From positions 124,001-188,000 of IMG/VR virus record IMGVR_UViG_3300009011_000001: DNA of 64,000 bases. One strand, 5' to 3'. The notes under the pieces are model-generated. The model was not told the origin of the DNA. It saw only the letters and a program-made list of their open reading frames with translations, and did not search any database. Shown here piece after piece: positions 1,109 through 54,645 of this stretch (its first letter is position 1; each line of letters opens with the position of its first letter). The position numbers were made by a program, and so were the translations under genes.

Positions 1109-1505
1109 GGGCTCACTCATCGGCATGAGCGTTAACATGATGGGGACTGCAGGTACTGGACTTGCACTCTCTATCAGGGAACATCAACGATCTGTGTTTG
1201 ATCAGTACGTGAAAGCTTGCAGGCGAGGGACTATCAATACCGACACCATTGTCCTCGATGGTCTGCATCAGAAACTTCTATTGATGCCTATTAAAACGGG
1301 CTGTGTAAGTCATCCATCTCTGGAGATCATTGAAACATCTATTAAACGGTTGTGGCTCTACATGACCGAGAACAATATCGATACCGTCTATCTTCCAAAG
1401 CTGGGTTGTTCTGAAGGCCCACGCAGTCTTGATTTTGATGAGGACATCATTCCTTTACTTACGAAATACTTCCTCGATACCGACTTTACGATCTACATCT
1501 ATTAA
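1068..1505 (+). CDS. macrodomain (Poa1p/DarG-like ADP-ribose binding or hydrolase) protein, divergent
   Basis: VNMMGTAGTGLA...YVKAC...MPIK...TVYLPKLGC matches the macrodomain N-x-x-G-x-x-G-x-G and P-x-L-G-C motifs. Confidence 0.65.
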   Translation: MSFRLLSPVGIIPKGSLIGMSVNMMGTAGTGLALSIREHQRSVFDQYVKACRRGTINTDTIVLDGLHQKLLLMPIKTGCVSHPSLEIIETSIKRLWLYMTENNIDTVYLPKLGCSEGPRSLDFDEDIIPLLTKYFLDTDFTIYIY

Positions 1506-1508
1506 CGA

Positions 1509-1540
1509 CATACAGCCAGCCCATAGGGGCTGGCTGTATG
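1509..1540 (+). terminator. CATA...TATG-closed hairpin terminator
   Basis: CATACAGCCAGCCC-ATAG-GGGCTGGCTGTATG; arms identical to 4154-4185. Confidence 0.8.
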
Positions 1541-1567
1541 CTGTATTTATCACATCTAAAAAATCTT

Positions 1568-6162: not shown

Positions 6163-6408
6163 ATGGAGCAGACTAAGTTTGTCTCGCTGGTCGAATCTGC
6201 TACAAACATGTTTATCAGTTACACTACGGCGATATTGGCTCAGGTCATTATCTTCCCATTCTACGACGTTCACGTTCAGCTGCATGAGAACATGTCGATG
6301 GCTTTGATCTTCGCCATCATCGGTTTCTTCCGCAACTACGGCGTTCGTCGCCTGTTCAACGCAGCACCATGGGTTAAGTTCAAAGGGGCAAAGAATGCGC
6401 AAAATTGA
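6163..6408 (+). CDS. small membrane protein
   Basis: AAGGA RBS; two hydrophobic helices; QTK..SLVE..N...RNYGVRRLFN pattern common in phages. Confidence 0.7.
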   Translation: MEQTKFVSLVESATNMFISYTTAILAQVIIFPFYDVHVQLHENMSMALIFAIIGFFRNYGVRRLFNAAPWVKFKGAKNAQN

Positions 6409-8353
6409 TTCGCAGTACAAAGATCTGTATCGCTTCATTCTTCAGCAAGGTCTGGCCAAGGCTAGCCGCACCGATATCGGCACTACGTCGGCGCTGGGCG
6501 GCTGGATGCGTTTCGATTTGCGTGACGATATCCTCCCGATCACGTCTCTGCGTCTGGTGCGCGAAGAGAAGTTCATCGGGGAGCAACTCTGGTTCGTCTC
6601 CGGCGATCCTTCGATCAAGTTCCTGAAGGACAACAACATCAGCATCTGGGATAGCTGGTTCATCCCAGGAACTGCCGTCTACGAAGACGAACAGCAATGG
6701 CGCCCAATTGTTGATGTGTTGCGGGAAGTATTCCGTTTGAAAATGGGCACTCAAATTTCAAACGATATCGTTTGCCACAAGCTGGCTACCGATACAGGCA
6801 TCTTTGCATTCCACGATCTCTTGTTCTGCATGGGGCTGGAAGATGGAGCTGATCACGTTAATCAGATCCATACCGAAAATGAATGCAACGGCTTCTCGAA
6901 AGAACAGATCGATGCCATTCGTACTCGTGCGACGGCGCTGGGCGTTGATGTGTCCTACTTGCCGAAGAAACCAATCGGCATTATCCAGCGTATTGCGCTG
7001 GCTAACGAAATGGGTCTGGGCGAAGAACTGTTCGAGTATTGCGACGGTCCAATGCCTCGTGAAGAAAAGGACACGATGTACGCGGAAGTAAACGTACAGT
7101 TGTGTCCAGAATTCACCGGCCCGTGGGATCTGTACCAATCCGAACTCGACCACATCGCCGAGTGGCTGACTTCGAAGAACGTTCCTACCGAAGTTCCTGC
7201 GCCACTAAAACCTGTCAGCCTGCAGACTCGTCTGAACCGGATCGACAAGAGCCAGTTCGGTCAGTGGAGCGCGATCAACCAGATCGTCTTCCCGCCTGTA
7301 GAAATGACGGCTGAACCAGCTCCTGAAGTCCGCACCAAAAAAGATGTCTTCGGCGAAGACGTTGTGGTGACGGCAGCGGCTGTGGAGGAAGAACCTCAGC
7401 CGAAACACACGCAGATCGAGATCTACTTCGAAGGTCGTTTCCAGAAAGTCGACATCAGCAAAGAACAGGCTGACGACATCTGGGAAATGATGGACATCAT
7501 GAAGATCCCGGCCTACCGTCTGGTCGACGCCAACATCGGCAAGGGTGGCTACGGCCCTCAGTGGCGTAACTGGCAGGACACTCAGATCGTTGACGGTTCT
7601 GAAGTTGAGCTGTACAAGTCCAAAGGTTACGAGTATGTCACTGAAGTAGACGACCTTGACTTCGGTCATCGTTTCTACGGAAAGGTGGTCATGCACCGCG
7701 ACATCGATCAGTTGGCAAATATGATCGATCTGCTGAAGACCGATCCGGACAACCGCCGCATCATCGTGTCTGCATGGAACCCGGGTCGTACTTGGCAGGC
7801 GGCTCTGCCTCCTTGCCACCTGTACTACCAGTGCGTGACCTACGAGAAAGATCTGCGTGACTACGAGGAAGACTTCGCGAAGCGCGATCTGACCGACAAG
7901 TATCTCGTCGGCCTGACTTCGATTCACGAAGGTGGCGAGCTCGATCCGGAAGATCCTGAAATCGAGAAGAAGTTCTTCGCTGCTGCGAAAGCCTTCGCTA
8001 TCGAGAATGGCATTCCGACTCGTTGGATCAGCATGGGTGTGGTACTGCGCAGCTGGGATACTCCGGCTGGTGGTGTGTTCAACACTCCGCAATACGCGGT
8101 GCTGTTGCGCATGATTGCTCATGTAACCAACATGGATGCTCGTGAACTGTTCATCGTTGGTATCGATGCGCATATTTACGACAACCAAATGGAAGCCATC
8201 GACGAGGTCATTTATACCGACTCTCCAGATGACTGCCCGCGTCTGTTCATCAAACGCGATGTTCAATCGATCGACGACTTCAACATCAGCGACTTCGAGC
8301 TGGTTGGTTATAACCCCGTGCCTAACACGAAGGTCATGCCGATCGCTCGCTAA
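6395..8353 (+). CDS. thyA: thymidylate synthase with large insertions
   Basis: RT.IGT, E.LWF, IWDSW, YGPQWRNW, RRIIVSAWNP, LPPCH, RS.D...FN, DAHIY. Confidence 0.95.
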   Translation: MRKIDSQYKDLYRFILQQGLAKASRTDIGTTSALGGWMRFDLRDDILPITSLRLVREEKFIGEQLWFVSGDPSIKFLKDNNISIWDSWFIPGTAVYEDEQQWRPIVDVLREVFRLKMGTQISNDIVCHKLATDTGIFAFHDLLFCMGLEDGADHVNQIHTENECNGFSKEQIDAIRTRATALGVDVSYLPKKPIGIIQRIALANEMGLGEELFEYCDGPMPREEKDTMYAEVNVQLCPEFTGPWDLYQSELDHIAEWLTSKNVPTEVPAPLKPVSLQTRLNRIDKSQFGQWSAINQIVFPPVEMTAEPAPEVRTKKDVFGEDVVVTAAAVEEEPQPKHTQIEIYFEGRFQKVDISKEQADDIWEMMDIMKIPAYRLVDANIGKGGYGPQWRNWQDTQIVDGSEVELYKSKGYEYVTEVDDLDFGHRFYGKVVMHRDIDQLANMIDLLKTDPDNRRIIVSAWNPGRTWQAALPPCHLYYQCVTYEKDLRDYEEDFAKRDLTDKYLVGLTSIHEGGELDPEDPEIEKKFFAAAKAFAIENGIPTRWISMGVVLRSWDTPAGGVFNTPQYAVLLRMIAHVTNMDARELFIVGIDAHIYDNQMEAIDEVIYTDSPDDCPRLFIKRDVQSIDDFNISDFELVGYNPVPNTKVMPIAR

Positions 8354-11264: not shown

Positions 11265-13469
11265 ATGAACCTCAATGCCGCTTCTTTGTTTGATCAGATC
11301 AAAGCACAGCTCAAAGATCAGCCCGCTTGTGTGCTCACGATCTATCGCTGGTTCTTCGAAAAGGATCAGCACGTCACGGTCGATATTCCGCTTGTCGACA
11401 AGATCCGTCATCTTCAAGGCGACGGCTTCACTTTCACGCTGGTGGAGGTCATGAGTGCAAGCGGTAAGTTGCGCTACCTGCGCACTGACTTGATGATGGC
11501 CTTTCCGAAACCGGTGGTCGTCAAACCTAGCGTTCTCAGCAATAGGTCAGAACTGCAACAGGAAGAACAACCGGTTCTCCCTTTGAGAACCGAGCCTTAC
11601 GTCCTCGGTGGTCGTGTGCCGGAAGCCATGGTCAAGCATCTTCAGAAGAATGCCGGTCTTCCAACCCGCCGCGCCAGCTCTAAAGTCGAGGACGAAGAAG
11701 CAGCATGATCAATTTCCGACAAACCGATCTTCCGATCTCCTACGAGCCCGTCATCGTCGACTTTCACGATATCAGACCGCCGAACGACGGTCCAATCTAC
11801 ACTGCAGTAATGCAGAAAGACGTTTTCACTGAAGCCATGGTCCGGCTCGATTACAAAGTGTACGGGACTTCGACTATCAGCGATAAGCATCTGCAAGTCG
11901 TCTATCTGCGCAAGGACATGTACGAGAAAGCTCAAGAAGACTTTCTCCGTTCCGATCGCAGTTCTATTGGCACATTTCGAGTGACCCCACAATGAGCAAG
12001 CGCACTAACCCTCACAAACAAGCAATGAAGAAACACGCCGCCGCCATGCACAATGCCCGTTACACGCTGAGCAAGGAGTTTGACGCTCTGGAAGCTGGCC
12101 GTAAGCGCTTCGTGGCCACAACGGCCAATGGCGGCATGGGCGTTGTAACGGAATCATCAAGCGTCTCCACAGGGACTCTGGCGGAGTTCATGGAGAACGG
12201 TAGCCCTGGTGACGTCTACGTTGAACGCGGCATCGAAGTTGTTAAAGACGCCGCCGGCGTGATCGCCGATGACAAACTGGTGATCGGTAACGAAATGAAA
12301 ACTTCGTTGCCACAAGGTTTGCACTTTGCCGGGCACGAACCTCGTGACTATCAATTGCCGGCCATTGCTGCAGCAGAAGCCATGGTGGGCGAACACATCC
12401 CTCGCGGTACCGTGGAAAACTCTGGCGGAATACTGTTTGTCTGTGACAGCATTTCCCCTCTACCGGTGGGTGAAGGCAGCATCGAAGACATTCATGGTGA
12501 ATTCGCGAAGCTGGTGGATGTTGGTCTGCCTTCGACTTTTGCTACGGGCCGATCCAGCGTTTCCGGCTGCTTGCCAGAAGAACTCGGCGTAGGTGCCAAA
12601 CTTCCTCCGGCAGTCATGGAAACCATTGAACGTCGTCTTTCCGAGGAATGAGTCGATGATCGAGAATCACGACAAAAATCAGGTCATCATGTCGGTCGAA
12701 AACTACGAGGCGTTGGTGATTGCCTCCAGTAAGGGCATCGGCATGCTGCCTCGTGAGCTGAATCGAATTAAGCGCCATGTGCGTAAGTTCAATTCGCCTC
12801 AGAAGGAAAAGCGCGCAGCACAGCTGAAAGATGAAGAAACCCGTAAGTGGTGCCTTCGTCAGGAAGCTACAAAGCTCGTAAAGACACATGAAGGCAAGAC
12901 CGTCATCGTTCTGTACAAGTATCCCGACAAGGCTCCTGTTGGCGTTCCAGGAACTCTGAAGGGGTATTCGTCACATGGCGTTGGTTTCGTTGCCGTGCGT
13001 CTCCACAGTCGCGAAATGAAACGCTGTATCCATCTGCTGGCAGAGTTTGTTCTGTCCGTAGAGGAGTACGAATCGATGCAACAAGTCGACATCGCTGAAC
13101 GTCGACGCGAAGCATTTAAACAACTCGCAGAAGAATATCCAAGCGCCTCTTTCGTGCACGAGCTTCGTCCTCAGTCCTAATGAGATGAGCCTTGCAGAGG
13201 TAATTAGGATGGAAACCGTGAGAGTGAATCGGCATCGCTTACTGGTGGGTGATCGGTTTGTTCTGCCTGAAGACCGAGATCGATTGCTCTACGAAGTACA
13301 GGGAAGTCATCCCGAGTCAGGTTTGTTGATCAGACGTATTAAGCATAGCTGGTACGGTTACATGCATCGCGAAACTGGGTTAGTCATTGGGAGTGAAAAG
13401 GGGAGCAGTCTAAAGGAACTGATGACGATTCCTTCGGTTGTTTTGATGCGAGAAGTTGATTTGGCATAA
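11265..13469 (+). CDS. run of five hypothetical CDSs (11265-11708, 11705-11995, 11992-12651, ~12656-13180, 13185-13469)
   Basis: Closely spaced or ATGA-overlapping junctions; no recognisable motifs. Confidence 0.65.
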
Positions 13470-13470
13470 G

Positions 13471-13504
13471 GCATAGAGGCAGGGCGTTTGCCCTGCCTCT
13501 ATGC
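13471..13504 (+). terminator. CATA...TATG-closed hairpin terminator
   Basis: GCATAGAGGCAGGGC-GTTT-GCCCTGCCTCTATGC followed by a T-rich tail. Confidence 0.85.
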
Positions 13505-13533
13505 TGTTTCATTTTCTTTTACTTACTTATTTA

Positions 13534-33400: not shown

Positions 33401-34086
33401 ATGTCGCCTGAAGCTAAAGAAGCGGTTGAAGGTTTTCGTGCAACGGTAAAGCGAATCAGGGAATCTCTCCAGTCGTTGTTTGAGAAGATTCGCGACGGCA
33501 TGGACCACCGCGATCACAGCGTTTTGCACAAACACCGCAATGACGTCAACCGTAACGGCATGCCTGTAAACCGCCGGAAAGGCGTCGGTCACTATCGTCG
33601 ACCACAAGGAAAGAAGAAGTAATGAATATTTCCAACGGTCTTCCAGTCAGCCTGCAGGCAGAATTCGAAGATCCCGAACAGTGCAACACGATTCCGATTG
33701 TTGAACACGCTCGCTGGCTGAAAGGCCAAGACGCTGAACACGTCAACGGCTATGCGCACAAAACGCCGTACACCCGTGTCAATCTGGCCGGGGTGTTTCA
33801 ACACCTGTCACCGGTGGTGGAGTTGTTTGAAGAAGCGACCGAACAAGCTGTGCTGAAGGCTCTCTCGGCTCGTCTGCAGATTGATTTCGTCCAAGGCGAT
33901 GTACGGATCCACTTTACGCAAGACGGTATGCCAAAGCCCGGTGAGAGCTATGATGCTTACATCTTTGCTCTGCCTTATTCTGCCGTGTATCAGGGTTGCG
34001 CAACTCTGCGTATCTACAATCCTGGCAAATACATCCAGGCAGAGATCGTTCGTGATGAAACTGGGAAACTGCTTCCGAAGGCGTAA
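33401..34086 (+). CDS. two hypothetical CDSs (33401-33622, 33622-34086)
   Basis: GGAGGG RBS; TAATG overlap. Confidence 0.7.
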
Positions 34087-34119
34087 TTAATTACGGGAAG
34101 TCGAACTCCTATACAAACA

Positions 34120-34432
34120 ACCACTGCTGAAGGAACTGCAATGCGCGTAGCAGTCCTCGGGGCGTTAATGAGGATAACGTATCCCGATTGACTGGGCGAA
34201 GGACCAATGTCCGTGGCCACTAAAACTTAAAGCTTCAACCGAGTCGGGATAACCGCTCTTTGAATTGCACAAGCAAAAGCTTGTGTGAACTGCAGCGTGC
34301 GCATACACGCCGTAGCGCAACATCCGCCCCGACGCAAATTCCATTGAACAGGCGAGTTCTGGTTTATCGGTACCGATAAATTGCAGTTCCACACTGGAGG
34401 AAATGGACAGGGGCGGTATTTCTTTCTTTTTA
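34120..34432 (+). ncRNA. candidate ~300-nt structured non-coding RNA
   Basis: ORF-free on +; 11-bp closing IR (34132-34142/34380-34390); multiple internal stems with G-U pairs; T-tract end. Confidence 0.55.
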
Positions 34433-34473
34433 TGCTGTTCTATTTCTTTTAATCAACCGCAAGGAAGTTACAG

Positions 34474-37400
34474 ATGGATACCGCTGCTCTTAAAAAGCTC
34501 CCCATTCCTAAGCCAGGAAAGACCTCTCCAGAAACCTACGGGTTCCTGTTCGGGGTTATGAAGACCCTTGAAAACTCTCCTCATGATCACGACTTCAGCG
34601 TTCACGGGAAAACTGAAGTGGTGAACTTCAGGATCAACCGCAATCGCAGCCAGATGGGGATGTTGAGCTTTCGACCTACTCAGCCCGGCCCCGCATTGGA
34701 AAATCCTGTAACGGTGTCCGATGAGTTCATCGCAGGTTTCGGTAAACAGATCGACGACAAACGCGTGGAACTGTCCGATGGTTCCGAAAAGGCTTTCTCG
34801 ATCATCCTGGCCTGTCTGAAGGGTCGCATGATCGTCACTCGCACTACTTGTGATGTGGTCCAGATGTGGAGCGGGCGAGGGGTCAAGGTCAAGCTGAATG
34901 GCATTTTGATCGATGGCCAATCGACACCAGTCGGCTTCATCGATTTCGACTTTACTCTGGCTCCGCGGGTGCAACGCTGGAATTTTCCACGCAGGCTCTA
35001 GGTAAATAGCAATGGCCCAAATACCACTACCGCGAGATGCGTTCGCCTATACCGACATCGATGGTAAAGAAAGAACGTGCTACGTCGTAAGTAGTTCTGA
35101 CCGGCGGCGAGCCCCGTGGCGGCGTATGAAGAAACACATCGCGGAAACCGCTGCCCTGAAGCTGAAAGAGGAATCGCAGGATGTCAAAGCTTAAACGACT
35201 TCACGAAAAATACGAAGAAGTTAAACTCTGGCTGAGTGAGCGCGACCGTAAGATCGAGCAGCTCGAAGACGAAAAGTCTAAAGATCAGAAAACAACTGCC
35301 TATTTGCAAGAAGAGATCAAGAAGCTCAGCGCTAACGTGCAGGTGCTTCAGGGTCGTCTGATTAAATACGAAGGCACCCCGGCGAATCGTCGTGGCGACA
35401 CTGGCGAAAGCGACGACTTTGCTCACTATCTGGATCGTGAGCGTTCTGACCTGCCTTTAGGCGATTACACGGATGATGAGCTGGCCAATGCTATCTTCAT
35501 GAACTACGATGTCTTTCCTTCTGTCGAGGAACTGCTTTCAGGCAAAGCCAAGATGCCAATCGCCTACATGACTGCCGGTAAAGAGCGCATTCGCTGGCTG
35601 TCCCGCAAACTGGCTGAAGCGCTTGCCGCTGATTTGGCCAACTCACCAAAAGGTACCCTGGAGGTATAATGTCTAACAAATACACTTTGATCGATGCAAC
35701 TATCGGTGTTAAATGTTTCGGCACCGGACGGATCGATGTGAAAGAAGTCCTATCCGACATGGGTGTTGCGGTGACTCCGAAGTCTGAAGAACACCCTGGC
35801 TTCAATGTCTACCAGAAACGCCTCTACGAAGACAACCCGGATTTCGACTTCGAAGAAAACAACGGCGTGATCGACTACACTCAAGTCGGCGAGCCTAAAG
35901 ACCAGATGGTCACTATCGTGATCGAGGTGGAGAACGATGCCTAGAGTGAAGCTGGACGGAGCTACTGCTCTGACCTTGGAGCTGAAAACTCCTACCGAAC
36001 AAGCAACGGTGGTCTTGACCGCCCTTGCTCCAGACAACGTTATAGGTCTGATCAACCTGCAATACGAAAAGACCGGCAACAGTCCTTACGATCTTGCTCA
36101 ATGGCTGGTCGGTAAGAACTGGGCGGTTCTTGCTGTGTCCCATCCCGTAGCTTTGAAGCGCGAAATCAAGAACCTTCAAATCACCACTCAACGCCCTGAT
36201 TAAGGAGCTGTGAAATGAAACTGTCCGACATGGCAGCACTGGAAGTACCGAAAGGTGCCACTCACTTTGTTCTCGATAACGACGGCTTCAGTGCCGCCTG
36301 GTATAAACGCGAAGGCGTAGAACTGTACGGCATGCCGATGGACGTTTCTCGTGCCGGCGATGGCTGGGCAAAAACGCCAGGGTGCACTCGCGCCCTGCGT
36401 GATCTGAAAACCGATATTGAACTTAAATTTGAACGCGAAAGATTGGGGAAATAATTAATGTTCCAGATTATGCTTGCTGGCATGGTTGCTTTTGATGGCA
36501 GCTACTTCGACAATATCGGTCGCGCTCTTGCGTTCGGGTTGCTGTTGTTCTTCACTTATCTGACCCTGTGGATTCTGGCCGCCCTGTGGAACTTCGCCTG
36601 GGCGTGGATCGACGATGCTCCACGTAAGCGTTACAACTGCTTCAGTGGCTTCATCGCGCGCCTGACTGGCTACGAATGGCGTGGTGGTACCTGGGCATGG
36701 CACTCGAAGCGGTTCGGTGAGTCGGACATGATTCACATATTTCCGATGATCTTCGTCTTCGCCCTGCCAATGGTTTTGGTAACCCTTTTCACGTTCTACA
36801 GCTTCTTCCTCACCTGTGCCGTCTGTGTTGGCGCAGCATTTGGCACTCGCTTCGTTCGCCGCATGAAGAAAGCTTTCGATAAGCACGTCGGCGACAAACA
36901 CGCTCACCAGAAGGACGACTAAAATGGACGCGCCAGACAATAAAGAAGAGCAACCTGTCTTGCGCGATATCCTTGCCATGCACGAGCAGGTCTTAAACGA
37001 CCTGCTCCTTGAGCTGCCTCATGAATCCAAGCTCATCGCTTTGCAGGTATTGAACAAGCATCAACAGAAAATCGCCAACAAGTACTTTGACATTGACAAA
37101 CCCACTGACCCGGCCATCACCGAGTTGTTTGAAACCTGGCTCAGAATTGGCCTCAACGCCGAGAAAGATGAAGAGGCTCGAACTACTGCTCGCCGCAATG
37201 TGATTCGCAGTCTCTTTAAAGCCCACGGTTTCACTGTCAAGCCTGGTGAGACGGATCTGAAGGAATACGTCTTCCGTGCAGCCGAGTCGCTAATTCGTCG
37301 GATCGATGTGTTCTATCGGAAGATGGGTATCGTCGCCATCACGAAGACTGGCGATTTCGACCACAACACCGTCGAGCATTATCAGGCGATGGAAGATCGC

Positions 37401-38438: not shown

Positions 38439-38579
38439 ATGGTAAAAAGTTACAATGCGTATTAGCTATATGTAGGAAGAGCACTGCCCGGCGGGCAGCA
38501 AGGCTATTCTACACGACGCAACCCGCCGGTGATGCCGGTGCCTTTGAGCGAAATGGCGCTCTGGCGGGTTGCGTCACCT

Positions 38580-38667
<88 letters not shown>

Positions 38668-39291: not shown

Positions 39292-39378
39292 CCCTGGGTA
39301 GCTCAGTCGGTTAGAGCAGCTCTCTGAGGTCGCTCCTCAGGAAGAAGGTCGTGGGTTCAAGTCCCGCCCTCGGGGCCA
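39292..39378 (+). ncRNA. aberrant tRNA-like RNA with an extended anticodon arm
   Basis: Canonical D arm, T arm and GCCA, but the anticodon arm is TCT-CTGAGG-TCGCT-CCTCAG-GA-AGA with no valid 7-nt loop. Confidence 0.75.
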
Positions 39379-39650: not shown

Positions 39651-39867
39651 TTCAACGTGTAATGTCGGTGACCCATCGTCGCGCATCCATGCCGAAGACT
39701 AGGAAGTGGCTAAGTGTGGTAACCGGCACCTAGAGTTGTACCTGCTTTAAGCCATCGTCGGACGGGATTGTAACTCCCAACCTCAATTTCCCATACGGCC
39801 GAAAAAGCCGGAGTTGGTTAGTGTAGATGGGCCGTAAATCGGTAGCAGGTGGCTAAACAAACATACT

Positions 39868-39892
39868 GGCCTGCTTCGGCAGGCCTTTATGC
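39868..39892 (+). terminator. terminator of the tRNA operon
   Basis: GGCCTGC-TTCG-GCAGGCC-TTTATGC. Confidence 0.75.
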
Positions 39893-39904
39893 TGTAAATA
39901 TTCT

Positions 39905-53039: not shown

Positions 53040-54590
53040 ATGGACACCGCTGCCAATCACCTAAAGATTGTTGTACTTAGAAACTTGCGTTACTCGGTGC
53101 CTGCTGTCCTCTTATCGATTCTCGGAGACCATGCCCGCATAGAGGAGGCGGTTGACACGTACCTGAAGGATCTTGAAAAATATATCAAGACAGAAGATCA
53201 CCTCATGATGTGGAATCTGGCCTCGAAATACGTCATACACAAAATAAAGTTTCAACTTCTTGAAACCGTCGCCGGTAATAGATCGCCTGTACCCGCCGCC
53301 ATTACTGACCGATTCAAGGAGATACTCAGCGACTACAAAGATAGTGACGAGTTAGCCGCGCATTACGAAAACAAATTTTCATCCATCGCCGATATGAGGA
53401 CCCGTTATGCCCACCGCCCTACCTAAATCCCCACCCGCTCCATCGACTACGAAAGATTACACCTGGTCAGCTCCGATACCTTCCCAGGCTCAGATTGAAC
53501 GTTTCAAAAAGTTCAAAGACTCAGGTGGTGAAGTGCCTGTAATCAAAGGCATCGTGATGGGCGGTCATTATACCGACCTCATGAAAAGTTTCTTCGGGAT
53601 GTGGGAACTCGCTGGACTTCCTACAGGCAATGGTAACTTCCCAATTTGTGCGCCTGAGTTTGGATTCACTCCCGAAGAACAGACGCAACTGGAAAAAGAT
53701 TTCGATAAGGTAACCATGAGGACTGGTGAAGAATTTTCTTTTGTTAGAAGCAAGTTGGGTTCCGAATACGATATCGTGTCTGTGATTTATGGCGTGCCAC
53801 GCACTCGGCGTGAATATGCGGACTACAGAGCCAACATGAACGCAAAGGATGGCGGCGATGATCAGAAGCCTTTGGAATAAGTGGAAGTATAGCCGGCAAA
53901 AAGACAGCATCGATATTCTTTTGATGTATATCGTGTCGTCAGGAACAGCCGGCATTAAACTCCCATTTGAAGATAATTTGGGGAATGTCGTAGAACTACC
54001 CGTCATTGGTTACAACGCGGATAATGTCTACATCGATATCGATCATCATTTAGCCTTCTTCCCAAAGGACCGCATGCGACTCAGCGACCTGGAGTTGGAC
54101 AAACGCATCATGGCGATAGAGCCCGCTCTAATCCCACCGAAGTCGAAAAAGCTGTACAAACATTTAAACTCCTTCAAGGAATTGGAGGGTCAGGCTGTTC
54201 GCCTACGACACACGATCACCGGTCAGATCCACAAGTACGAAAACTTCTGCTTGGACTGCAGCTCTCTGATGCAGAGCGATAGTCGGGTCTACCATCTGCC
54301 AATCATGATTGCTGTTGGTTGGATCAGTAAGGTGATGTACCTCGAACATTTGGAAGTTCACAAAACAGTCAAGTGAGGCATTCATGTATAACAAGGTTCT
54401 GACGGGGTACGATAACCGTCACCAGTCCAAGCCAACGATAACGATCGGTAAGGCCCGCCTCGATCCGCCGTTGGAGAAAAGCCCACTTGGGCCAGATCAC
54501 GATATCGTGATGGAGATGTGGGGAGAGAAAACTACCCGCAAGGAATACATGTTCTTTAAACAATGGGCTGAAAGCCTAGCGAAAGCATAA
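53040..54590 (+). CDS. four hypothetical CDSs (53040-53426, 53407-53880, 53858-54376, 54384-54590)
   Basis: Coupled ORFs. Confidence 0.65.
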
Positions 54591-54594
54591 ACGA

Positions 54595-54627
54595 CATACA
54601 GCCCGGCCGTAGTGGCCGGGCTGTATG
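54595..54627. terminator. CATA...TATG hairpin between convergent genes (probably bidirectional)
   Basis: CATACAGCCCGGCC-GTAGT-GGCCGGGCTGTATG. Confidence 0.8.
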
Positions 54628-54645
54628 CTGTCTTCTTTCTTTTTG

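What the first reader, a model, noticed from the sequence alone, without database searches (positions are those of the whole stretch)
34120..34432. Large structured non-coding element with long-range closing stem and alternative pairing
Seen: ~350 nt with no credible + strand ORF in an otherwise gap-free operon. A perfect 11-bp IR, GGAACTGCAAT (34132-42)/ATTGCAGTTCC (34380-90), encloses several stems: TCCTC/GAGGA, TATCCCGATT/AGTCGGGATA, GGAC/GTCC, TTGCACAAGC/GCTTGTGTGA, CTGCAGCGTG/CACGCCGTAG and an 18-nt palindrome TTTATCGGTACCGATAAA. CCGCCCCGA (34324-32) can pair with TCGGGGCG (34157-64) or with GGGGCGG (34410-16) just before the T-tract. G-U pairs favour the + strand. Inference: an unrecognised large ncRNA, ribozyme or RNA switch. 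The IR-then-G layout is loosely retron-like, but no reverse transcriptase is present.
Basis: partly seen in the sequence, partly recalled or inferred. Interest (0 to 1): 0.75.

Follow-up and report, generated by a model that had tools for sequence, protein, structure and literature searches.

The report
New structured RNA in jumbo phages
The 387-base gap holds a real non-coding RNA whose roughly 200-base folded core is conserved in seven lineages of uncultivated phiKZ-like giant phages, matches no known RNA family, and has an unknown function.

Summary
The window is part of a 248.6-kb phiKZ-like jumbo phage genome.

Evidence that this is a conserved RNA:
- The gap 34087-34473 differs from a close relative (L002) at 3 of 387 bases, against about 4.2% in all four flanking genes.
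- I found homologues in six further phage lineages. A core of about 200 nt (34217-34419) is shared.
- 94.5% of pair cells are canonical, and 18 of 37 pairs show compensatory changes. Partners slid by 1-3 columns give 37-46% and 3-7.
- There are 17 G-U pairs against 1 A-C, which places the RNA on the + strand.
- It is not coding: distances between conserved blocks are not multiples of three.
- No Rfam family matches any lineage. The genome has no reverse transcriptase, so it is not a retron.

What comparison changes:
- In relatives the RNA follows a small membrane-protein ORF driven by a phiKZ-type TATG promoter. Here that ORF is reduced to 16 codons.
- The conserved partner of CCGCCCC is GGGGCGG, with covariation.

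Best reading: a 3'-UTR-type structured RNA that has become a stand-alone ncRNA, probably protein-binding. The function is inferred, not shown.

The parts
34089..34114 (+). Promoter-like remnant: AATTAC (34089-94), 15 nt, then TATAC (34110-14). Relatives have AAAATACC, 14 nt, then TATG upstream of the small ORF.
   Evidence: One search shows this upstream block is nearly identical in six relatives. TATG with G as +1, and a middle-promoter motif AAanTTACc near -24, are the phiKZ nvRNAP promoter elements (PMC4666361). Here G is replaced by A, so activity is uncertain.
34130..34191 (+). Vestige of the small membrane-protein ORF: SD AAGGAA (34130-35), ATG 34141, 16 codons, TGA 34189-91.
   Evidence: Relatives carry an 86-99 aa ORF with the same SD and start context, AAGGAA(A/G)CTGCATG. 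From the start codon to the invariant hairpin is 100 nt here and 284-374 nt in relatives.
34132..34142 (+). 5' arm of the perfect 11-bp inverted repeat (GGAACTGCAAT). It overlaps the SD and start of the vestigial ORF and is found only in this lineage.
34113..34216 (+). 5' extension found only in this lineage.
   Evidence: It has no counterpart in relatives. There are 0 changes in 130 nt against L002, P = 0.004 at the coding-region rate.
34217..34419 (+). Conserved RNA core shared by seven lineages.
   Evidence: Alignments A5 and A6. Covariance model R1 scores 128-220 bits in all lineages.
34241..34258 (+). Helix Ha: invariant hairpin GAG-U-CGG / GAUAA / CCG-CUC.
   Evidence: The 18 nt are identical in all lineages. 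All pairs are canonical with no variation.
34267..34286 (+). Helix Hb: 8-bp hairpin, extended to 34265-88 in this phage.
   Evidence: 6 of 8 pairs show changes on both sides; 93.8% of cells are paired.
34290..34315 (+). Helix Hc: hairpin with loop CGCAUA. It is shorter and different in L008 and L004.
   Evidence: 87.8% paired, 2 pairs with double changes. A hairpin of other sequence sits at the same place in L008 and L004.
34323..34330 (+). Helix Hd, 5' strand (CCGCCCC).
   Evidence: It pairs with 34410-17. G-C changes to U-A in 4 lineages and C-G to U-A in L128 and L004. All cells are paired.
34340..34345 (+). Helix Hg, 5' strand (UCCAUU). It stacks on Hd across the conserved internal loop GAYGNAAAU / CA.
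   Evidence: 4 of 6 pairs have double changes; in L004 it is CUUAAG/CUUAAG.
34346..34359 (+). Helix He: GAAC / AGGCGA / GUUC, including the conserved GAGUUC.
   Evidence: 91.7% paired, with little variation.
34361..34382 (+). Helix Hf: variable hairpin.
   Evidence: Every lineage has a hairpin between GAGUUC and (A)GUUCC, each with a different sequence. 4 of 4 modelled pairs have double changes.
34380..34390 (+). 3' arm of the 11-bp inverted repeat (ATTGCAGTTCC). Only its AGTTCC part is conserved.
34386..34396 (+). Conserved GUUCCRYACUG segment. It may form a small hairpin with loop UCCRY.
   Evidence: GTTCC and AC are invariant columns. The pairing is weak.
34402..34417 (+). 3' strands of Hg (AAUGGA) and Hd (GGGGCGG[U]), joined by CA; GACAGGG is conserved.
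34417..34430 (+). Pyrimidine-rich tract UAUUUCUUUCUUUU. With Hd it looks like a terminator.
   Evidence: It is conserved in 6 of 7 lineages. L004 instead has a canonical terminator hairpin 15 nt downstream. 3' end formation is inferred.
34431..34438 (+). TATGCTGT: a generic phiKZ-type promoter/terminator signal, and the likely start site (G 34434) for ORF175.
   Evidence: The genome has 23 copies, 20 of them directly after a strong hairpin. TATG is the nvRNAP late-promoter consensus with G as +1 (PMC4666361).

Best explanation
Shown: the gap encodes a + strand structured RNA. Its roughly 200-nt core (34217-34419) is conserved with compensatory base changes in seven lineages of uncultivated phiKZ-like jumbo phages.

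The core has two parts. The first is an invariant bulged hairpin with a GAUAA pentaloop (Ha), followed by two variable hairpins (Hb, Hc). The second is a 3' domain closed by a GC-rich long-range helix (Hd, extended by Hg). That helix encloses two more hairpins and several invariant single-stranded blocks. A pyrimidine tract follows.

Shown by comparison: in relatives the RNA is the 3' part of a short transcription unit. The order is a phiKZ-type promoter (AAAATACC...TATG), an 86-99 aa membrane-protein ORF, the RNA, and then the next gene's TATGCTGT signal. In this phage the ORF has shrunk to 16 codons while the RNA stays almost unchanged. The unit is therefore now a non-coding RNA gene of about 310 nt (about 34113-34430).

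Inferred: the RNA is made as a 3'-UTR-type transcript that ends at Hd plus the U-rich tract. It probably acts as a stable, compactly folded RNA that binds a specific partner, most likely a protein. The partner would recognise the invariant Ha hairpin and the conserved junction sequences, while the variable hairpins act only as scaffolding. I put about 0.9 on the first two steps and about 0.4 on the protein-binding, trans-acting mechanism.
For: Purifying selection at the nucleotide level:
- 3/387 changes against 77/1822 in the flanks. All three fall at unpaired, variable positions.

Homologues:
- L004/L007, L008/L140, L128/L064, L130/L142, L205 and L201/L200/L202.

Structure:
- RNAalifold predicts 37 pairs, 17 of them compensatory.
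- On the model-based alignment 94.5% of cells are paired and 18 pairs have double changes. 0 of 500 shuffles reach this. Slid controls give 37-46% and 3-7.
- My own helix table gives 93% against 35-45%.

Strand and coding:
- 17 G-U against 1 A-C.
- Spacings between blocks are 87, 88, 87, 67 and 68 nt. The antisense open frames are out of register between lineages.

Context:
- The upstream promoter-like block and small ORF are conserved in six relatives.
- TATG promoter biology comes from PMC4666361.
- The RNA persisted after the ORF was lost, so its role does not depend on that protein.
- The 18-nt Ha hairpin is invariant, stem included, while neighbouring proteins are only 57-62% identical. 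This fits sequence-specific recognition.
- There is one copy per genome.
Against: - There is no expression data, so the 5' and 3' ends are inferred from motifs.
- The window's promoter counterpart reads TATAC rather than TATG. In phiKZ each TATG position mattered in vitro.
- One relative (L006) has deleted the RNA together with most of the DUF7941 gene, so the RNA is dispensable there.
- Only seven lineages are known and they are related. The shuffle control therefore overstates significance, and the model-fitted alignment leans towards the structure.
- No partner protein is identified, and all neighbouring genes lack annotation.
- The element always lies directly before a terminator/promoter signal. 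That fits a cis-acting transcriptional role just as well.
Confidence: 0.5

Rival explanations
1. The RNA is a cis-acting transcription element. As it emerges it would modify the phage RNA polymerase, or recruit a factor through the boxB-like GAUAA pentaloop hairpin. It would then set termination or read-through at the signals just downstream. In principle this resembles HK022 put or lambda nut sites. Alternatively, its 3' domain is simply an elaborate terminator.
For: - In every lineage the element sits directly upstream of a terminator-type signal. That is Hd plus a pyrimidine tract plus TATGCTGT in six lineages, and a canonical hairpin plus U-run in L004.
- At 34431 the generic TATGCTGT lacks the local hairpin that 20 of 23 other copies have. 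The RNA's Hd helix stands in that place.
- The gene array downstream, up to the tRNA cluster, is syntenic across lineages.
- Antitermination has been proposed for phage 201phi2-1 (PMC11512511).
Against: - The next gene has its own TATG signal 40 nt before its start codon.
- A terminator does not need 200 nt with invariant blocks.
- The likeness of Ha to boxB rests on my memory of boxB pentaloops and was not tested.
- phiKZ-type polymerases are non-canonical, and no nut- or put-like system is known for them.
Confidence: 0.25
2. The RNA is a 3'-UTR element that serves the small membrane-protein mRNA, controlling its stability, translation or localisation. One version is a fold-back of the 3' region onto the ribosome-binding site, as in hok mRNA. 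In this phage it would be a decaying leftover.
For: - The RNA always follows the small ORF in relatives.
- In L128, L130 and L205 the ORF's stop codon is the UAA in the Ha loop.
- In the window the SD and start region pairs perfectly with 34380-90.
Against: - The RNA is under strong constraint in the very lineage that lost the ORF: 2 changes in 203 core bases and 0 in the 130-nt 5' part.
- Complementarity between the SD region and the 3' region is only 4-6 bp in relatives (sequence, checked by eye).
- In L008 and L004 the ORF ends 95 and 67 nt before Ha.
Confidence: 0.1
3. One reading: an RNA switch that toggles between the closing-stem fold (inverted repeat plus TCGGGGCG/CGCCCCGA) and the fold with CCGCCCC/GGGGCGG before the T-tract.
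For: For transcript 34113-34432 the two folds differ by only 1.6 kcal/mol, -109.1 against -107.5. The 5' part is unchanged between the window and L002.
Against: The upstream partner and the extended inverted repeat exist in no other lineage. Covariation supports only the Hd pairing. The downstream genes differ between lineages, which is unlike a riboswitch.
Confidence: 0.08
4. The RNA is a self-cleaving or otherwise catalytic RNA.
For: It has a multi-helix junction with invariant unpaired blocks and variable peripheral hairpins. That pattern is typical of compactly folded functional RNAs.
Against: No known ribozyme family matches at E up to 10. Nothing in the sequence points to a cleavage site.
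Confidence: 0.05
5. It is not an RNA at all, but a minus-strand small protein gene, a DNA-level site such as an origin or operator array, or a miniature transposon bounded by the 11-bp inverted repeat.
For: The minus strand is free of stop codons across the core in three lineages. The - strand folds almost as well as the + strand. The 11-bp arms resemble terminal inverted repeats.
Against: - Conserved blocks fall in different antisense frames in different lineages, and indels are not multiples of three.
- 17 G-U against 1 A-C pairs give the helices a strand.
- There is a single copy per genome.
- The inverted repeat is absent from relatives that have the core.
Confidence: 0.02

Closest known systems
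3'-UTR-derived bacterial small RNAs that share the mRNA's terminator (for example CpxQ, SroC; from general knowledge)
   Same: The RNA lies at the 3' end of a protein-coding transcription unit, on the same strand. It ends at a GC-rich helix followed by a U-rich tract. It can outlive or act independently of the upstream coding sequence.
   Different: It is about 200 nt with six or seven helices and a closed multi-branch domain, not a short seed-pairing sRNA. It is phage-encoded and would be transcribed by a non-canonical phage polymerase. No target or chaperone is known.
Large orphan structured RNAs linked to phages (GOLLD RF01998, ROOL RF03087, HEARO RF02033)
   Same: These are complex-folded RNAs of unknown or recently emerging function, often carried on phage DNA near tRNA genes. 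Here the tRNA cluster lies 4 kb downstream.
   Different: No covariance-model match. This RNA is much smaller than GOLLD or ROOL and is known only from a narrow clade.
5'-UTR-derived sRNAs of phiKZ and 201phi2-1 (sRNA005 / sRNAgp182; PMC11512511)
   Same: They are conserved small structured RNAs in nucleus-forming jumbo phages, defined by position and predicted fold.
   Different: Those lie upstream of a tail-protein gene and arise by premature termination. This one follows a small ORF, is larger, and was not found in five cultured phiKZ-like phages.
Cis-acting antitermination RNAs (HK022 put; lambda/P22 nut boxB)
   Same: It is a structured RNA just upstream of terminators. Ha is a short GC stem with a G-A-N-A-A pentaloop, as I remember boxB.
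   Different: It is about three times larger than put. No N-like protein is known and the polymerase is non-canonical. The likeness was not tested.
Retron msr-msd RNA
   Same: An inverted repeat flanks a structured non-coding stretch.
   Different: The genome has no reverse transcriptase. The inverted repeat is specific to this lineage, and its 5' arm is a former ribosome-binding site.
The phage's own hairpin-TATGCTGT terminator/promoter modules
   Same: A GC-rich helix is followed by TATGCTGT and a pyrimidine-rich stretch. The Hc loop GCAUAC resembles the ACAUAC at the 5' foot of those hairpins.
   Different: The loop of Hd is a conserved 79-nt folded domain. A 14-nt spacer separates Hd from TATG, and about 100 nt of further conserved structure lies upstream.

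Membership tests
Any Rfam 15 family (4227 models, including riboswitches, ribozymes, RNase P, tmRNA, 6S, group I/II introns, GOLLD, ROOL, HEARO) | Covariance-model score at or above the family's gathering threshold | tested here: not met
   The window at gathering thresholds gives only tRNAs. The region 33950-34600 at E up to 10 gives only a chance snoRNA hit outside the element. Four homologous loci at E up to 5 give nothing in the element.
Retron | A reverse transcriptase gene next to the msr-msd RNA | tested here: not met
   PF00078 finds nothing in the whole 248.6-kb genome, while the control genomes give hits. The neighbouring ORFs have no Pfam match.
Retron | Conserved flanking inverted repeats (a1/a2) around the RNA | tested here: not met
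   The 11-bp inverted repeat is found only in the window and L002. Relatives with the core lack it.
Riboswitch / cis-regulatory leader | Constant association with a downstream gene class that it controls | tested here: not met
   The downstream gene is the ORF175 family (window, L008), a 288-aa protein (L128, L201, L205), a 356-aa protein (L004) or a GIY-YIG endonuclease (L200, L202).
Riboswitch / RNA switch | Conserved mutually exclusive pairings | tested here: not met
   An alternative partner for CCGCCCC is present only in this lineage.
Group I intron | It interrupts a gene whose exons join in frame | tested here: not met
   The DUF7941 gene is complete at 149-154 aa in relatives that have no gap. 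ORF175 has its own SD and start, with an in-frame stop 21 nt upstream of the start.
Protein-coding gene, either strand | A reading frame kept across homologues, with indels in multiples of three | tested here: not met
   Block spacings mod 3 differ between lineages. Antisense translations put the conserved blocks in different frames.
Miniature inverted-repeat transposon | Several copies bounded by the terminal repeats | tested here: not met
   One copy in the genome. One copy each in G001 and G002.
Conserved structured RNA (generic criterion) | Helices kept through compensatory changes, above slid-partner and shuffle controls | tested here: met
   94.5% paired and 18/37 pairs with double changes; 0/500 shuffles reach this; slides give 37-46%. 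One search gives an independent RNAalifold prediction on the MAFFT alignment.
Intrinsic terminator | A short local GC-rich hairpin (loop 3-8 nt) followed directly by a U-run | tested here: inconclusive
   The consensus scan finds none in the gap. Hd is GC-rich and followed by UAUUUCUUUCUUUUU, but its loop is 79 nt. Termination by the phage polymerase cannot be judged from sequence.
nut/boxB-type antitermination site | A GNRA-like pentaloop hairpin bound by an arginine-rich N protein, with a boxA element | not testable with these tools
   The Ha loop GAUAA fits the remembered pattern. CGCUCUUU follows Ha only in this lineage. No N-like protein was identified.

The most novel reading that the evidence does not exclude
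The RNA founds a new class of compactly folded regulatory RNA specific to nucleus-forming jumbo phages. It would have been built by expanding one of the phage's own terminator hairpins: CAUAC ... GC stem ... GUAUG-CUGU, with a 79-nt domain grown into the loop. It would act on the phage's non-canonical RNA polymerase, or on a host factor, as an RNA-only or RNA-plus-protein device such as processive antitermination or a decoy for a host RNA-binding defence. That would be the first such RNA device described for the phiKZ-type transcription system.
Probability: 0.2. Interest if true: 0.8.

Novelty: new variant of a known kind. Interest (0 to 1): 0.55.

Why it matters
phiKZ-like phages transcribe their genomes with their own unusual RNA polymerases inside a protein-walled nucleus, and almost nothing is known about RNA-level control in them. 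This is a roughly 200-nt RNA with an invariant hairpin and well-supported helices. It is kept under tight constraint even after its companion gene was lost. That makes it a concrete object for asking how these phages end, extend or tune transcription, or how they engage host RNA-binding factors.

It also shows a route by which a messenger's 3' untranslated region becomes a free-standing RNA gene. Two limits apply. The family is so far known only from seven lineages of uncultivated phages. The function is inferred.

Tried and rejected
- Rfam at gathering and at permissive E-values, on the window and on four homologous loci: no family.
- blastn 'distant' of the gap and of the core against 50,697 phage records: no real match.
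- tblastn of the small ORF and of the DUF7941 protein against the same records: nothing.
- The search for related loci with both flanking proteins in IMG/VR: no relatives.
- A 14-mer scan of IMG/VR gave only chance hits apart from L064. The second pattern (CCCGAYGNAAAT...GACAGGG) added no new lineage.
- The 18-mer scan of prokaryotic genomes gave only chance hits in coding DNA.
- Covariance model R1 against five cultured phiKZ-like phages (FLC9, Eowyn, pPa_SNUABM_DT01, LucasX, Proteus phage 10): no hit at E up to 1. The positive controls worked.
- More distant ORF175 homologues (L197, L198, L199) and L003, L005, L006 carry no copy.
- Split gene or group I intron: rejected, because both neighbours are complete genes.
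- Antisense protein: rejected.
- Retron: rejected.
- A resemblance I thought I remembered to 23S rRNA domain V (GGGAUAAC, CCGCCC, GAGUUC, CAGUUC in order): tested against E. coli rrlH and rejected. nhmmer gave no hit, and Smith-Waterman scores of 20-22 equal the shuffled mean of 21.
- A long-range helix GUGGC (34213-17) / GCUGU (34434-38) proposed by RNAalifold on the first alignment: dropped. GCTGT is part of a generic TATGCTGT signal found 23 times in the genome.
- Pfam and PHROGs on the neighbouring proteins gave no functional lead.

Full report
**Setting.** The window is bases 124001-188000 of a 248,574-bp IMG/VR virus record with direct terminal repeats. It carries two phiKZ-type internal head protein genes (PF12699) and a large helicase. 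The helicase's best relatives, at about 40% identity, are phiKZ-like jumbo phages such as Burkholderia phage FLC9 and Klebsiella phage Eowyn. The phage is therefore an uncultivated, distant member of the nucleus-forming jumbo phage group. Genes around the finding form a dense + strand array, and a tRNA cluster lies 4 kb downstream.

**The observation.**
- The gap between ORF154 (33622-34086; DUF7941, PF25613) and ORF175 (34474-35001) is 387 nt.
- ORF175 has its own ribosome-binding site AAGGAAG, and an in-frame stop lies 21 nt before its ATG.
- The + strand folds with z = -3.4 and the - strand with z = -2.6.

**Constraint.**
- A 2342-nt Logan contig (L002) is a close relative. The four flanking genes differ at 4.1-4.5% of bases, mostly at third codon positions.
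- The 387-nt gap differs at three bases: 34231, 34392 and 34446.
- Fisher p = 2.6e-4. Against the 10.4% third-position rate the probability is 6e-15.
- The conserved block matches the gap to within about 20 nt on each side. This fits selection on the non-coding sequence better than a chance recombination tract.

**Homologues.**
- An exhaustive protein search with ORF175 found distant relatives, and the word-index search with ORF154 found P0004.
- Reading the intergenic gaps of their contigs showed shared blocks, first in L004 and then in L008.
- The 18-mer GAGTCGGGATAACCGCTC is identical in all of them. Scanning for it found L064/L128 and L130 in IMG/VR, and confirmed copies in JGI metagenomes.
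- Homologues of the small ORF led to L205 and to the L200-L204 group.
- Seven lineages are now known. Each of the three large or complete genome records searched whole (G000, G001, G002) holds one copy.
- Nothing was found in cultured phages by blastn, by tblastn of the neighbouring proteins or by the covariance model R1.

**Structure.** The shared core is window 34217-34419 (alignment A5). RNAalifold on the plain MAFFT alignment predicts these helices:
- Ha: 34241-58, an invariant bulged hairpin with loop GAUAA.
- Hb: 34267-86.
- Hd: 34324-30 paired with 34410-16.
- Hg: 34340-45 paired with 34402-07.
- He: 34346-59.
- Hf: part of the variable hairpin at 34361-82.

17 of the 37 predicted pairs are compensatory. 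Hc (34290-34315) is present in five lineages and is replaced by shorter hairpins in L008 and L004.

On the alignment made with model R1:
- 94.5% of 311 cells are standard pairs, and 18 of 37 pairs change on both sides.
- No shuffle out of 500 reaches any measure.
- Partners slid by 1-3 columns give 37-46% paired and 3-7 double changes.

Caveats: there are only seven related lineages, the structure was derived from these sequences, and the alignment was fitted to the model.

The clearest cases are:
- Hd: CCGCCCC/GGGGCGG here, CCCUUCCC/GGGAAGGG in L128, CCUCCCC/GGGGAGG in L130, AUUGCCCC/GGGGCGAU in L004.
- Hb: GCACAAGC/GCUUGUGU here, GCACUGAU/AUCGGUGC in L128, GCAUGAA/UUCAUGC in L201.

The helices contain 17 G-U cells and one A-C cell, so the RNA is read from the + strand.

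**Not coding.** The minus strand is free of stops across the core in three lineages. However, the conserved blocks fall in different antisense frames in different lineages. Distances between blocks are 87, 88, 87, 67 and 68 nt, and 26, 26, 26, 27 and 28 nt.

- In all six relatives the core is preceded by an 86-99 aa ORF with hydrophobic segments typical of a membrane protein.
- That ORF is preceded by a nearly identical block, GTAACAAAATACCTGCAATATCCCTAATATGCAAAACCC...TAAGGAAACTGCATG.
- TATG with its G as the start site is the phiKZ nvRNAP late-promoter consensus, and AAanTTACc near -24 marks middle promoters (PMC4666361). The block looks like such a promoter.
- In the window the same layout remains: AATTAC, 15 nt, TATAC, and AAGGAACTGCAATG. 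The ORF, however, stops after 16 codons, and the distance from ATG to Ha is 100 nt instead of 284-374.
- In relatives this region is complementary to the AGUUCC region over only 4-6 bp. The upstream TCGGGGCG partner does not exist in them.
- In silico the two folds of the window's transcript differ by 1.6 kcal/mol. The 5' part shows no change against L002, P = 0.004. A role for the extension in this lineage cannot be excluded.

**The 3' end.**
- TATGCTGT at 34431 is one of 23 copies in the genome. Twenty follow a strong GC-rich hairpin whose 3' strand ends in (C/G)UAUG, and one of those lies between convergent genes. This is a generic terminator/promoter module.
- At 34431 there is no local hairpin. 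Hd and a 14-nt pyrimidine tract stand in its place.
- L004 has a canonical hairpin and U-run after the RNA.
- In L200 and L202 a GIY-YIG homing endonuclease gene begins right after Hd.
- These observations place the 3' border of the element at Hd. I infer that the RNA ends there, and that ORF175 is transcribed from G 34434.

**Interpretation.**
- The element is a 3'-UTR-type structured RNA that has become a stand-alone RNA gene of about 310 nt in this phage.
- Its constraint after loss of the ORF argues that it does not merely serve the small protein's mRNA.
- The total invariance of Ha, stem included, points to sequence-specific recognition by a partner. So do the conserved junction blocks and the freely varying peripheral hairpins.
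- I favour a protein-binding, trans-acting RNA at about 0.4.
- The main rival is a cis-acting element that sets termination or read-through for the phage polymerase, at about 0.25.
- A helper of the small-ORF mRNA, a lineage-specific switch, a ribozyme and non-RNA readings are less likely.
- One relative (L006) has deleted the RNA together with most of the DUF7941 gene, so the RNA is not indispensable.

**Comparison with known systems.**
- No Rfam family matches.
- The genome has no reverse transcriptase.
- The downstream genes vary, unlike the gene class downstream of a riboswitch.
- Both neighbours are complete genes, unlike the exons flanking an intron.
- The element is single-copy, unlike a transposon.
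- A remembered likeness to 23S rRNA was tested and is at chance level.
- The nearest analogies are 3'-UTR-derived sRNAs, orphan phage-borne structured RNAs, and put/nut elements. These are analogies of layout only.

**Verdict.** Interest is moderate to good. The structure is solid, the distribution is narrow, and the function is open.

Noticed in passing
window 1497-1544, 13460-13507, 39848-39895, 54584-54631 (and 34431-38 without a hairpin); 23 sites in the whole genome: A genome-wide module: a GC-rich hairpin whose foot is CAUA(C/G)...(G/C)UAUG, followed by CUGU and often a pyrimidine-rich stretch. 20 of 23 TATGCTGT sites have a hairpin of -12 kcal/mol or better. One lies between convergent genes. 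It looks like a combined terminator and phiKZ-type TATG promoter.
   Followed up: partly
L200:2779-3618 and L202:1035-1873: A GIY-YIG / I-TevI-like homing endonuclease gene is inserted directly after the 3' strand of helix Hd. It replaces the pyrimidine tract and TATGCTGT seen in the otherwise identical L201.
   Followed up: partly
L006:1809-1974: A 44-codon stump of the DUF7941 gene (58% identical to residues 8-33 of ORF154) lies directly before the ORF175 homologue. This relative has deleted the rest of that gene, the small ORF and the RNA.
   Followed up: yes
L128 (minus strand), L130, L205: The stop codon of the 99-aa small ORF is the UAA inside the invariant GAUAA loop of hairpin Ha, so a terminating ribosome would sit on that hairpin. 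In L201, L008 and L004 the ORF stops 12-95 nt earlier.
   Followed up: partly
L004:15890-16450: A stretch that reads like the 5' part of a tRNA (GGTAGCTCAGTTGGTAGAGCAATCG) lies just before an HNH endonuclease gene. It may be a tRNA gene interrupted by, or adjacent to, a mobile element.
   Followed up: no
window 39292-39375: Rfam's tRNA model scores 38.7 bits here, directly after tRNA-Ser, but ARAGORN does not report a gene.
   Followed up: no
window 6395-8353: A 652-aa ORF matches thymidylate synthase in three separate stretches. That is about twice the usual length, which suggests a fusion or an insertion.
   Followed up: no
window 34432-34452: A 6-codon ORF (MLFYFF*) starts at the ATG of TATGCTGT. 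Similar tiny ORFs occur in L128, L130 and L008, but none has a ribosome-binding site. It is probably a by-product of the promoter motif and the pyrimidine tract.
   Followed up: partly
window 34287-34294 and 34062-34072: GAACTGCA recurs at the foot of helix Hc, and a near copy (GGGAAACTGC) lies at the end of ORF154. Both could pair with the 3' arm at 34380-90, which gives further alternative pairings in this lineage.
   Followed up: no
window 38541-38604: Model R1 gives a weak partial hit (10.5 bits, E 0.13) overlapping the start of tRNA-Tyr. I judge it to be noise. It is included as a ninth row in alignment A6.
   Followed up: no
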